Program-made: the position numbers and the translations under genes | The notes under the pieces: model-generated | Database searches by the model: none | What the model saw: the letters and a program-made list of their open reading frames with translations, nothing else | What the model was told of the DNA's origin: nothing | Origin: Macrostomum lignano | Taxonomy: Eukaryota | Length of the DNA stretch: 64,000 nucleotides | Direction: 5' to 3' | Assembly: GCA_002269645.1 (NCBI GenBank) | Contig: NIVC01000067.1 | Coordinates: 682,001-746,000, forward strand | In this document: positions 22,339-25,300 of the stretch, one piece after another | How the letters are laid out: every line of letters begins with the position of its first letter | How positions within the stretch are numbered: the first letter of the stretch is position 1

Positions 22339-25300
22339 ATGCTACTGGCCAATGCGATGACGCCACTGCTGCTGCTCCTGTTGATTCTGCCAGCCAGAGC
22401 TACGGACCTGAAGATATGCAAGTCTGTCGAGCTCACACAGGGCAACTTTGAGCAGCATAGAAACACTGACAGGCTGTACAGGGAGCTCAAAGCCCGGGTC
22501 AGCAACTGCCAGTACATACACGGCGACCTCACCATCAAGAACATCGGCGTGAACCTCATGAACGAGGCACCGCTGCTGGACACGGAGGTGCGCAACATGA
22601 GCACCGACTTTCTGGACTCCATCGAGGAGATCAGCGGCCGCCTGCTCGTGTTCCGCGTCAACCTTCGCGTGCTCCGCCTGGCCAGTCTCAGGGCTATCCG
22701 CGGCTACAACCAGTTGGGCGAGTCGCCCTACTACCCGCTAGAGATTCGCCAGTCGCCCTATCCCATGCAGCTGCAGCTGCCCAGCCTCGGCGCCATCCTG
22801 CAGGGCTCTGTGCTGCTCAGCGGCGAGCTGCACGAGATTCTCTACTGCCACCTGACCCGCAGCGTCGCCTGGAACGAGCTGTTTAAATCGGCCAGCCAGA
22901 GACTGCAGGACCGCGTCACCGCGGTGGCTCCAGTGGGGAACTACAGCTCTGAGGTCCGGTTGAACACGTCCGATGCCTGTCTGTCGGGCGATCCGCAGCT
23001 GAACTGCCACGGAAGCTGCAAACTGGACGTCGACAGAGGCCAACGCATCTGCTGGTCTGCCGGGCCCAACGGCTGTCAAAGCTCCAGTCGGTGCAGCAGC
23101 GACCACAGCGGCTGCGGCTCCTGCTTCCAGGATGCTGGCAGGGAGGCCTGCTGCGACAGCTACTGCCTCGGCGGCTGCAGCTCACGTGGACGCAGCGCCT
23201 GCTTCTCCTGCCGAGACGTCAGCCGCGATGGCAAGTGCGAAAACGCCTGCCCGACGGACTACGACCCGGGCAAGGGCGTCATCGTGAGCCGCAACGACAG
23301 CACCCTGCAGGTTGGCAACATCTGCGTCCGGACCTGCCCGCCCGGCTTCCAAGAGAGCTCGGACAGCCGGTTCTGCCTGTCCGAGTGTCCGGTCCAGGTG
23401 CCCGGAGACGATCGGCGACGCGGCGAATTGCCAGTCAACGGAATCTGCCGGCCCTGCGAGCGAGCAGCCGACTGCAGAGCCTGCCGTCTGTCGGCGGCGA
23501 TCTTTACGGACGCCGAGGCTGACCGCCTGCGGGCTGACGGCTGTCCCGTCTGGCAGGCCTCCGAGCTGCAGCCGATGCTGGACGTCGACCCTCAGAGGCT
23601 CAGCAACGCAAGCCTGCAAGTTCTCGGTCAGCTGCGCTACCTGTACGGTAACTTTGTGGTAAGAGAGTCAAGGGCAGCCTGGACTTCCTGACCAACCTCA
23701 CCTTTGTATCGGGCAACCTGGGCCTCATGATGACAAACACTCCTTACCTGGGCCTGGCGTCGTTGCAGAGCGCCAAAGCTGTGACGCTGTTCCGGGTGAG
23801 CGGCCTGTGCCAGGCCTGGTACCCGGCAGAGCGAATCAACAAGCTGCGGGAAAGGTCAGCGCTTCTGATGCATTTTGTTCAGAACGTATTAAAAAGCCAA
23901 ACGCTTAAATTGACCCCTCATAGTGAGCCTAAAGTAAATTTAATTGTACGAGCATATATTAATACTAGCATAATAACTAGATGTATCGCACAATACGAGC
24001 GTACGTTTGTGAAAAAGTGGAGCGTCTACTCTTTGTTCAGTAGTATGTCTGCGCAGTGTCATTTAAATTCAATGTGGCAGCAAAAATTTCTTTTCCTTCC
24101 TCTGGTTTTTGTGGTCTGGGGTAAGAAATAATTCGATGTAGGGGGCAGAAAGACTGGCTCAGCCAATGAGAGAGCAGTAAGGAGAGAGGTCAAAGTTAGA
24201 CGGACGAAAGAAACTCAGTTTAGGGGTCTGGCCCAATCTGGCTCAGCCAATGAGAGAGCAGTAAGAAGAGAGGTCAAAGTTAGGCACAAGAGGGCCAAGA
24301 GGAAAGCAAATCGGCTTAGCTGGGGGCTGGGGTGCCACCCCTTTTCTCTCTCACTCGCTACGCAACACGCACTGGATTTTGGGGCTTTCAGGTTTTCCTG
24401 CAATTTTCAGACCTAAGTTCATTTCTTTTTTAAATAATTTCGAGTCTGGGACAGTCTGGAGTTGATAAAGCATGATTAAGATGCTAATTTAATGGGTCTG
24501 ATTGGTCAGAAGCCAGAAGCGATTGTTGCAGCCTGTAAAATATTGTAAAATTTATTAGATTTATAATTTAAACTGCAAACTGCAAATTGAGCAGAATTTA
24601 ACCCTTTGAGCTAAAAAGAGGTCAGACATTATGAGTTCGAGCTGATCAATCAAGCAGCACATTAAAGGACAAAAAAGATGGGACAGAAGACCATGCATGG
24701 CTTAGAAAAAAAGAGCACACGGCGCCCCATGTTGCTGACGCCCCTTGGTGCTGGCGCCCCTTTGGTGCTAAAGCCCTTGGTCAGCGCCCGACGGCGCTCA
24801 TCAAAATTGTAGTCATATTGAATCCGAATCGCACTGCCCCATTCCCGCAGGTTCGAAATCTCCGAAATAAATGTCAGCTTCGACAACACCAGCGCCGAGT
24901 GCGCGAAGGCCGCCTGTCATCCTCAGTGCACCGGCGGCTGCTGGGGCCCCGGACGCCGGCTCTGCGTCGCCTGCCTTCGCTACCGCGTCAACGACAGCTG
25001 CTACGCCGATTGTAAAGAGGCGCACCGGTTTGCCTGGAATGCCACAGCCTGCGGCGCCGCCTGCCACGCCGAGTGCAAAATCGGCTTCGGGTGCAGCGGC
25101 CCTGGCCCGGCCGACTGCGTCAGCTGCCGCCGGTTCAACGAGAGCGGCGTCTGCGTGTCCGAGTGCAGCCGCGGCCACCGGCCGGACTCGAACGGTCGGT
25201 GCTACTCTGTGATGGTGGCGGTTGGAATCTGCCTCGGTGTCGGGCTGCTGCTGCTGCTGACGGCCTCGCTGCCCCTGGCTGTGCTGTACTATCGCAGGCG

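What the first reader, a model, noticed from the sequence alone, without database searches (positions are those of the whole stretch)
23653..23691. EGFR frameshift at a perfect donor-like motif: decoy receptor, micro-intron, pseudogene or assembly error
Seen: frame 1 reads YGNFV then stops at 23691, while the L2 domain continues in another frame (VKGSLDFLTNLTFVSG...). The junction is GTG|GTAAGAGA|GTCAAG|GGC. Removing 8 nt (23659-23666) gives FVVKGSLDFL; removing the 14-nt GT..AG segment (23659-23672) gives FVGSLDFL; removing one GA from the GA run also restores frame. All downstream exons and kinase motifs are intact. Uncorrected, the product is a 450-aa secreted L1-CR1 ectodomain. Established: soluble ErbB ectodomain isoforms exist in mammals, and 14 nt is below known spliceosomal intron sizes.
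Basis: partly seen in the sequence, partly recalled or inferred. Interest (0 to 1): 0.72.

Follow-up and report, generated by a model that had tools for sequence, protein, structure and literature searches.

The report
One missing G in flatworm EGFR copy
The frameshift is a single missing G in one of three near-identical copies of an EGF-receptor gene in the published Macrostomum lignano genome assembly; it is most likely an uncorrected long-read sequencing error, or else a very young lesion in a redundant copy, and it is not a tiny intron.

Summary
An EGFR-type receptor gene switches reading frame between 23652 and 23688, and the uncorrected ORF ends after 450 aa.

The window is contig NIVC01000067.1 of the Macrostomum lignano Mlig_3_7 assembly (24,940 of 24,940 bases identical). 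The gene is copy g3 of Mlig027475. GenBank annotates it only as the 621-aa ORF downstream of the shift.

Copies g1 and g2 in the same assembly are intact and read GTG GTG AAG AGA GTC AAG (…FVVKRVKGSLDF…). The window reads GTG GT- AAG…, so one G is missing between 23660 and 23661. That deletion itself creates the "perfect donor" GTAAG. The proposed 8-nt and 14-nt "introns" are ordinary codons in the intact copies, so the micro-intron reading is refuted.

With the G restored, my five-exon model gives 1084 aa, collinear with g2, with 7 amino-acid substitutions and no length difference.

g3 and g2 match exactly for 1,089 nt to the left and 1,051 nt to the right of the gap. The assembly was built from PacBio reads with Canu and polished only with Pilon, and short reads cannot tell the two copies apart here.

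My estimates:
- uncorrected consensus error: about 0.65
- real young frameshift in a redundant homeologue of this neopolyploid: about 0.3
- functional decoy receptor: about 0.03

Interest is low.

The parts
22339..23660 (+). Exon 1, part upstream of the lesion: signal peptide, L1, furin-like CR1 and the start of L2. Codon starts at pos%3==1.
   Evidence: Pfam Recep_L_domain and Furin-like. Third-position GC 0.83 in this frame. Identical to g2 over 22572-23660.
23660..23661 (+). Lesion: one G is absent between these two bases. The intact copies read GTGGTGAAG; the window reads GTGGTAAG.
   Evidence: Direct comparison with L003 (g2) and L005 (g1). Predicted independently from codon usage and from the paralogue profile.
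23659..23672 (+). In fact these are codons V(K)RVK of the L2 domain. The GTAAG motif is created by the deletion.
   Evidence: g1 and g2 read GTG AAG AGA GTC AAG here, inside an uninterrupted annotated CDS. This is the only GTAAG in the five exons.
23689..23691 (+). Premature TGA reached in the shifted frame. It ends the 450-aa ORF.
23661..23854 (+). Exon 1, part downstream of the lesion: the rest of L2 (KRVKGSLDFLTNL...INKLRE). Codon starts at pos%3==0. Donor AAG|GTCAGC at 23855.
   Evidence: Identical to g2.
24851..25448 (+). Exon 2: CR2 (GF_recep_IV), transmembrane helix, juxtamembrane segment and the GxGxxG motif.
   Evidence: Pfam. Splice sites. 100% identical to g2.
26756..26914 (+). Exon 3: kinase N-lobe (VAVK).
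27191..27388 (+). Exon 4: kinase, HRDLAARN.
27884..28666 (+). Exon 5: DFG, kinase C-lobe, C-terminal tail and stop codon.
   Evidence: Pfam PK_Tyr_Ser-Thr..
23727..28666 (+). Extent of the deposited GenBank gene model for this copy: Mlig027475.g3, PAA92009.1, 621 aa, starting MMTNTPYLG. This is the longest ORF after the frameshift.
   Evidence: P0213 is an exact suffix of my model from residue 464.
22572..24711 (+). Tract in which this copy and copy g2 are identical apart from the missing G.
   Evidence: 1,089 nt exact to the left and 1,051 nt exact to the right. The next difference to the right is an A-run length difference.

Best explanation
The window is part of contig NIVC01000067.1 of the Macrostomum lignano Mlig_3_7 assembly. 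The gene is copy g3 of Mlig027475, an EGFR/ErbB-type receptor tyrosine kinase with five exons. It is present in three about 95-99% identical copies in this neopolyploid genome.

Copy g3 lacks one G in the codon pair GTG-GTG-AAG (V-V-K) of the L2 domain. That throws the reading frame and, by accident, creates a GTAAG that looks like a splice donor. Nothing is spliced or recoded here.

I judge the missing base most likely to be an uncorrected consensus deletion of the PacBio/Canu assembly. It would have survived Pilon short-read polishing because copy g2 is identical for about 1 kb on each side, so reads spanning the site align better to the intact copy. If so, the real gene encodes a normal 1084-aa receptor.

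Shown: the identity of the locus, the nature and position of the lesion, the intactness of the rest of the gene, and the refutation of the intron. Inferred: that the deletion is an artefact rather than a real mutation.
For: Locus identity: L004 is identical to the window at 24,940 of 24,940 bases.

Intact copies: g2 (P0094, 1084 aa) and g1 (P0212) both read FVVKRVKGSLDF. Their DNA is TTTGTGGTGAAGAGAGTC against TTTGTGGTAAGAGAGTC in the window.

Repair: with the G added, the five-exon model gives 1084 aa with 7 amino-acid substitutions and no length difference from g2.

Independent placement made before the homeologues were found: codon usage puts the switch right after 23658, and the best single-base fix in the paralogue-profile scan is FVVKRVKG.

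Artefact reading:
- The missing G is the only difference from g2 in 2,140 nt, and the next difference is an A-run length change. Over 22151-25792 the two copies differ by only 3 substitutions but two 1-nt indels. That indel-heavy ratio fits long-read consensus errors better than mutations.
- The assembly was made with Canu 1.4 from PacBio reads and polished with Pilon only (PMC5730564).
- A later paper calls the assembly 'certainly error-prone' and reports that about 70% of it lies in 3-copy blocks (PMC10733133).
- Long-read errors are known to create frameshifts that pseudogenize genes (PMC12007338).
- There is no other lesion in 3.25 kb of CDS, and all four introns keep their GT-AG borders.
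Against: No raw reads could be examined, so the artefact reading is inferred.

The missing G is not in a homopolymer, which is where consensus deletions are most frequent.

The local error rate is not high. In about 7 kb of ORF sequence compared across the three copies, this is the only frame-breaking indel that lies inside a segment with a clear coding signal. Over the gene region the ratio of 1-nt indels to substitutions between copies is within a normal biological range.

The genome is a recent polyploid with three copies, where real decay of one copy is plausible (PMC10733133). The two substitutions unique to g3 in the CDS are both non-synonymous (G44D, E861D). With only two events this is not significant.
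Confidence: 0.65

Rival explanations
1. The deletion is real. It is a very young frameshift in one of three redundant homeologous copies (subgenomes S, L1, L2) of a neopolyploid, making this a nascent pseudogene or null copy. Its mRNA would be a nonsense-mediated-decay target or would give a truncated product of no selected function.
For: Three copies exist and two are intact, so loss of one is affordable. M. lignano has had a recent whole-genome duplication with ongoing rediploidisation (PMC10733133). The lesion is not in a homopolymer. No general excess of coding indels is seen in this region. Both CDS substitutions unique to g3 are non-synonymous.
Against: It is the sole difference from g2 in 2.1 kb that carries no substitution at all. 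A real mutation would have to be the very first change after the two tracts became identical, and also be an indel, which is roughly a 5-10% class among mutations (my estimate from general knowledge). The site lies exactly where short-read polishing cannot work. There is no second lesion and no decay of splice sites or motifs.
Confidence: 0.3
2. The frameshifted copy is a functional gene for a secreted L1-CR1 decoy or ligand-trap ectodomain of 450 aa.
For: The ORF keeps a signal-peptide-like N-terminus and complete L1 and furin-like domains.
Against: All 634 codons downstream are intact, with unchanged codon bias and splice sites. That is not expected if they had become dispensable long enough for a new function to be selected. 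The copy differs from full-length g2 by one base in 2.1 kb. The stop lies more than 160 nt upstream of the last exon junctions, which would favour nonsense-mediated decay (inference). Known soluble ErbB forms arise by alternative splicing or polyadenylation, not by frameshift (general knowledge).
Confidence: 0.03
3. An 8-nt (23659-23666) or 14-nt (23659-23672) spliceosomal micro-intron is removed, restoring the frame.
For: GT at 23659, AG at 23671-72 and a consensus-like GTAAGAG.
Against: g1 and g2 carry the same nucleotides plus one G as uninterrupted codons, and their annotated proteins contain KRVK. Splicing would yield FVVKGSLDF or FVGSLDF, which differ from the intact copies and score 115.6 and 113.4 bits against 120.5 for the single-base fix. 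The four real introns of the gene are 276-1307 nt long and have pyrimidine-rich acceptors. This 'acceptor' tract is 40% pyrimidine. Mean intron length in Macrostomum annotations is 558-1114 nt (PMC10468722).
Confidence: 0.01
4. The frame is restored during expression by programmed ribosomal frameshifting, transcriptional slippage or RNA editing.
For: None beyond the intact downstream frame.
Against: The other two copies encode the same protein without any such device. There is no slippery heptamer or homopolymer at the site.
Confidence: 0.01

Closest known systems
Residual indel errors of long-read (PacBio CLR/Canu) assemblies that fragment genes, especially in multi-copy or polyploid regions where short-read polishing fails
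   Same: A single-base deletion and no other lesion. The assembly was built with Canu and polished only with Pilon. The flanks are identical in another copy for about 1 kb each side. The deposited annotation is truncated as a result.
   Different: The missing base is not in a homopolymer. Reads were not available here to prove it.
Homeologue decay (fractionation) after whole-genome duplication, as discussed for M. lignano subgenomes S, L1 and L2
   Same: One of three copies carries a disabling lesion while the others stay intact, in a recent polyploid.
   Different: The lesion is a lone base with no accompanying substitutions over 2.1 kb, so the decay would have to be extremely recent.
EGFR/ErbB receptor tyrosine kinases, including the two M. 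lignano paralogues Mlig012838 and Mlig030557
   Same: L1, furin-like CR1, L2, CR2 (GF_recep_IV), a single transmembrane helix and a tyrosine kinase with all catalytic motifs. About 50-53% identity to the paralogues, collinear throughout.
   Different: L2 is short and divergent, below Pfam threshold. This gene has four introns whereas both paralogues are intronless.
Soluble ErbB ectodomain isoforms of mammals
   Same: The uncorrected ORF would be a signal peptide plus L1-CR1 ectodomain.
   Different: Those isoforms come from alternative splicing or polyadenylation of an intact gene (general knowledge). Here the truncation comes from a one-base gap in one gene copy.
Ultra-short spliceosomal introns (ciliates, nucleomorphs)
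   Same: GT...AG borders only.
   Different: The segment is coding in the sister copies. Its length is below any known animal intron, and this gene's real introns are 276-1307 nt.

Membership tests
EGFR/ErbB receptor tyrosine kinase | N-terminal receptor L domain followed by a furin-like cysteine-rich region | tested here: met
   PF01030 E=2.3e-11 and PF00757 E=1.2e-11 in the 450-aa ORF.
EGFR/ErbB receptor tyrosine kinase | Second L domain (L2) | tested here: inconclusive
   Only 14.2 bits (E=0.049), below the Pfam cut-off, and only in a one-base-insertion reading (FVVRESKG, not the true FVVKRVKG). The segment is collinear with L2 of the paralogues.
EGFR/ErbB receptor tyrosine kinase | Growth-factor-receptor domain IV, a single transmembrane helix and a tyrosine kinase domain with GxGxxG, VAVK, HRDLAARN and DFG | tested here: met
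   PF14843 E=3e-14 and PF07714 E=1.4e-33. The motifs are visible in the model.
Spliceosomal micro-intron | The segment is absent from the mature coding sequence of orthologous or homeologous copies, or its removal reproduces their protein | tested here: not met
   g1 and g2 retain the segment as codons KRVK. The spliced products score lower against the paralogue profile.
Spliceosomal micro-intron | Length and acceptor context compatible with the organism's introns | tested here: not met
   The candidate is 8 or 14 nt, against 276-1307 nt for the gene's own introns. Its acceptor tract is 40% pyrimidine, against 65-85% for the real ones.
Established pseudogene | Several independent disabling lesions, or loss of codon bias or splice sites | tested here: not met
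   One lesion only. Third-position GC is 0.83 on both sides, all GT-AG borders are intact, and there is a single terminal stop after the fix.
Assembly (consensus) indel artefact | The variant is absent from the raw reads of the sequenced line | not testable with these tools
   No read data are reachable. Exact-product look-ups of the 450-aa and 444-aa ORFs found no independent contig, which is uninformative.
Assembly (consensus) indel artefact | Error-prone technology and a context in which polishing cannot act | tested here: met
   Canu from PacBio reads plus Pilon only. 1,089 nt and 1,051 nt are identical to copy g2 around the gap.
Secreted decoy receptor isoform | A stable transcript and secreted product, with conservation of the truncation | not testable with these tools
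   No expression data are reachable. The truncation is not shared by g1, g2 or the paralogues.

The most novel reading that the evidence does not exclude
The deletion is real, and copy g3 is expressed as a secreted 450-aa L1-CR1 ectodomain that acts as a ligand trap alongside two full-length homeologues. This would be neofunctionalisation by a single frameshift, caught within a very short time after polyploidisation.
Probability: 0.03. Interest if true: 0.45.

Novelty: not a real feature. Interest (0 to 1): 0.08.

Why it matters
Mostly as a caution. The deposited protein for this copy (PAA92009.1, 621 aa, described as 'protein kinase domain-containing') is a truncated model caused by one missing base. 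A reader could mistake the GTAAG that the gap creates for a splice signal.

If the deletion proved real, it would be a small but clean example of the first step of homeologue loss in a neopolyploid flatworm. It does not bear on intron biology or on receptor evolution.

Tried and rejected
1. Two homologous-protein searches, one with the junction-spanning ectodomain and one with the last 163 aa of the ORF, returned nothing. These were false negatives of the word index: the longer query returned a 99%-identical protein. I therefore do not use them as evidence of absence.

2. Exact-product look-ups of the 450-aa and 444-aa ORFs found no contig. This is uninformative, because deposited annotations are used and most contigs in the collection are short.

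3. An Rfam scan of the window found no hits.

4. Pfam scoring of alternative junctions barely discriminated them.

5. A profile built from the two paralogues ranked insertions above deletions but could not fix the position to better than about 2 bits.

6. A third-codon-position GC (GC3) scan for frame switches looked for other frameshifts in the window. The only other switch, near 62455, is a gene start (ATG at about 62436), not a frameshift.

7. dN/dS downstream of the lesion is not meaningful. g3 has only 2 unique CDS substitutions, and the paralogues are saturated at about 50% amino-acid identity.

8. Cryptic splicing from the new GT to a frame-restoring AG inside exon 1 (introns of 110-185 nt) would delete most of L2 and has weak acceptors. 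I consider it unlikely.

9. A literature search for the gene identifier found nothing.

Full report
**The observation.** The ORF that starts at ATG 22339 (codon starts at pos%3==1) ends at TGA 23689-91 after 450 aa. It contains a receptor L domain and a furin-like region. The frame with pos%3==0 is closed by TAA at 23649-51 and then opens. It reads …KRVKGSLDFLTNLTFVSGNLGLMMTNTPYLGLASL…INKLRE up to a donor at 23855 (AAG|GTCAGC). From there it joins exon 2 at 24851 in phase. The switch must therefore lie within 23652-23688. Third-codon-position GC content is 0.83 in exon 1, 0.83 in the L2 piece and 0.83 in exon 2, each in its own frame, and the periodicity flips at about 23660. The rest of the gene is intact. 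Exons 24851-25448, 26756-26914, 27191-27388 and 27884-28666 all have GT-AG borders and carry GxGxxG, VAVK, HRDLAARN and DFG. Any frame-restoring fix leaves one terminal stop.

**Inference before relatives were found.** An exhaustive HMMER search with the 450-aa ORF gave two strong hits of 1090 and 1091 aa (E=6e-94 and E=1e-67). Both are Macrostomum lignano receptor tyrosine kinases. They are collinear with my gene model over the whole length at 50-53% identity. At the junction they carry a longer loop than the window does, not a shorter one. I scanned every possible 1-nt or 4-nt insertion and every 2- to 14-nt deletion across the 37-nt interval against a profile of these paralogues. Insertions scored 119-121.6 bits. 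Codon usage of the gene is strongly biased: GTA is used for 3 of 67 Val codons, TCA for 3 of 86 Ser, while AAG is used for 20 of 27 Lys and GTC for 28 of 67 Val. This bias puts the best switch point directly after GTG 23656-58, leaving 'GT' plus a missing base and then AAG AGA GTC AAG GGC. Both lines predicted …FVVKRVKGSLDF…, that is, one base missing at 23659-61.

**Identification of the locus.** A longer query, running from L2 to the C-terminus, returned P0094. This is 'BOX15_Mlig027475g2 [Macrostomum lignano]', 1084 aa, 99% identical over 100% of the query. Its 90% cluster holds three copies from assembly GCA_002269645.1 (Mlig_3_7): g1 (P0212, 1130 aa, partial at the 5' end), g2 (P0094) and g3 (P0213, 621 aa). 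P0213 begins MMTNTPYLG… and is an exact suffix of my window model from residue 464. Its locus, NIVC01000067.1:695727-720666, is identical to window 13727-38666 at all 24,940 positions. The window is therefore that contig, and the finding concerns copy g3. GenBank annotates g3 only as the longest ORF after the frameshift.

**The lesion.** g1 and g2 read TTTGTGGTGAAGAGAGTCAAGGGC, which is F V V K R V K G. The window reads TTTGTGGT-AAGAGAGTCAAGGGC. Exactly one G is missing between window positions 23660 and 23661. With that G in place, the five-exon model yields 1084 aa with 7 amino-acid substitutions and no length difference from g2. It differs from g1 by 9 substitutions and one extra Q. The deletion turns GGTGAAG into GGTAAG, so the 'perfect donor' is a by-product of the lesion. 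It is the only GTAAG in the five exons.

The 8-nt and 14-nt candidate introns are the codons for (V)KRVK in the intact copies. Their removal would give proteins that differ from those copies. The gene's real introns are 276-1307 nt long with pyrimidine-rich acceptors, whereas the tract before the AG at 23671-72 is 40% pyrimidine. Annotated mean intron lengths in three Macrostomum genomes are 558-1114 nt (PMC10468722). The micro-intron reading is refuted.

**Artefact or real mutation.** This cannot be settled without reads, but several observations bear on it.

- M. lignano is a recent hidden polyploid. About 70% of Mlig_3_7 lies in three-copy paralogous blocks (subgenomes S, L1, L2), with about 1.1% substitutions in coding sequence. 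The authors of that analysis call the assembly 'certainly error-prone' (PMC10733133).
- Mlig_3_7 was assembled with Canu 1.4 from PacBio reads and polished only with Pilon, using Bowtie2-mapped Illumina reads and STAR-mapped RNA-seq reads (PMC5730564). No long-read consensus polisher is mentioned.
- Around the gap, g3 and g2 are identical for 1,089 nt to the left and 1,051 nt to the right. The next difference is an A-run length difference at 24706-24712. Short reads spanning the site cannot be assigned to a copy by flanking variants. If the true sequence has the G, they would align best to g2, so a consensus deletion in g3 would not be corrected. This last step is my inference about the polishing.
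- Over 22151-25792, g3 and g2 differ by only 3 substitutions but by two 1-nt indels. Among real mutations, single-base indels are a small minority (general knowledge). Among long-read consensus errors they dominate, and such errors are known to introduce frameshifts that pseudogenize genes (PMC12007338).

Against the artefact reading:

- The G is not in a homopolymer.
- The region is not riddled with coding indels. In about 7 kb of ORF sequence compared across the three copies, this is the only frame-breaking difference that lies inside a segment with a clear coding signal.
- Redundancy makes real loss of one copy plausible.
- g3's two private CDS substitutions are both non-synonymous, although two events carry no weight.

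My estimates are about 0.65 for an uncorrected consensus error and about 0.3 for a real, very young frameshift in a redundant homeologue. I give about 0.03 to that lesion being a functional secreted decoy, and about 0.01 each to a micro-intron and to recoding.

**Comparison with what is known.** The gene is an ordinary member of the EGFR/ErbB family by domain architecture, with a short, divergent L2. The lesion matches the well-known class of gene-fragmenting indels in long-read assemblies. Alternatively, it matches the first step of homeologue decay after genome duplication. It is not comparable to mammalian soluble ErbB isoforms, which arise by alternative RNA processing of intact genes (general knowledge). 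It is also not comparable to the ultra-short introns of ciliates.

**Verdict.** The explanation is mundane. The deposited annotation already reflects the frameshift, as a truncated 621-aa model. Interest is low. The decisive test is a k-mer count of the two alleles in the raw DV1 reads.

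Noticed in passing
window 22151-28735; switch between 25792 and 25838: The relationship among the three copies changes inside the gene. g3 equals g2 at 65 of 66 sites that separate g1 from g2 up to 25792, then mostly equals g1 from 25838 on. The switch falls at the end of a 9-nt tandem array in intron 2 (25472-25824). This is either homeologous exchange or gene conversion, or a chimeric contig.
   Followed up: partly
L001 3001-6273 and L002 3001-6276 versus window 22339-28666: The two M. 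lignano paralogues (Mlig012838, Mlig030557) are single uninterrupted ORFs. Mlig027475 has four GT-AG introns, and introns 2 and 4 are largely minisatellite arrays (25472-25824, 26486-26699, 27506-27847). This suggests intron gain in one gene or loss in the other two.
   Followed up: partly
window 24706-24712: There is an A-run length difference between g3 and g2. It is the nearest difference to the right of the missing G and is typical of either long-read error or real slippage.
   Followed up: no
window 27884-28666 and 35328-36818: UniProt A0A1I8IRX6 (P0096, from an older gene set) fuses the EGFR exon-5 tail, read partly in another frame, to the downstream rhodopsin-type GPCR. This looks like a gene-model artefact.
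   Followed up: no
window 18344-19799, 44961-45664, 48990-51072, 20262-21881: The window carries very long, nearly perfect tandem arrays: (GATA)x364, (CTA)x235, an 11-nt unit x189 and a 22-nt unit x74. Tandem repeats fill much of the intergenic and intronic space of the window.
   Followed up: no
window 4566-4886, 7342-7878, 6555-7157, 12623-15138, 35328-36818, 41450-47900, 59100-61000: Neighbouring genes are ribosomal proteins L37e and L18a (the matched ORFs appear uninterrupted), a scramblase, an MFS transporter, a GPCR, an ankyrin/ion-transport (TRP-like) channel and a glycogenin-like GT8. None shows a frameshift in the GC3 frame-switch scan; only the MFS and GPCR ORFs lie in the region compared with the other copies, and within their clear coding segments they show no frame-breaking indel.
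   Followed up: partly
tool behaviour: The word-indexed protein search missed a 99-100% identical database protein for queries of 163 and 316 aa, and found it only with a 640-aa query. Negative results from that tool should not be read as absence.
   Followed up: yes
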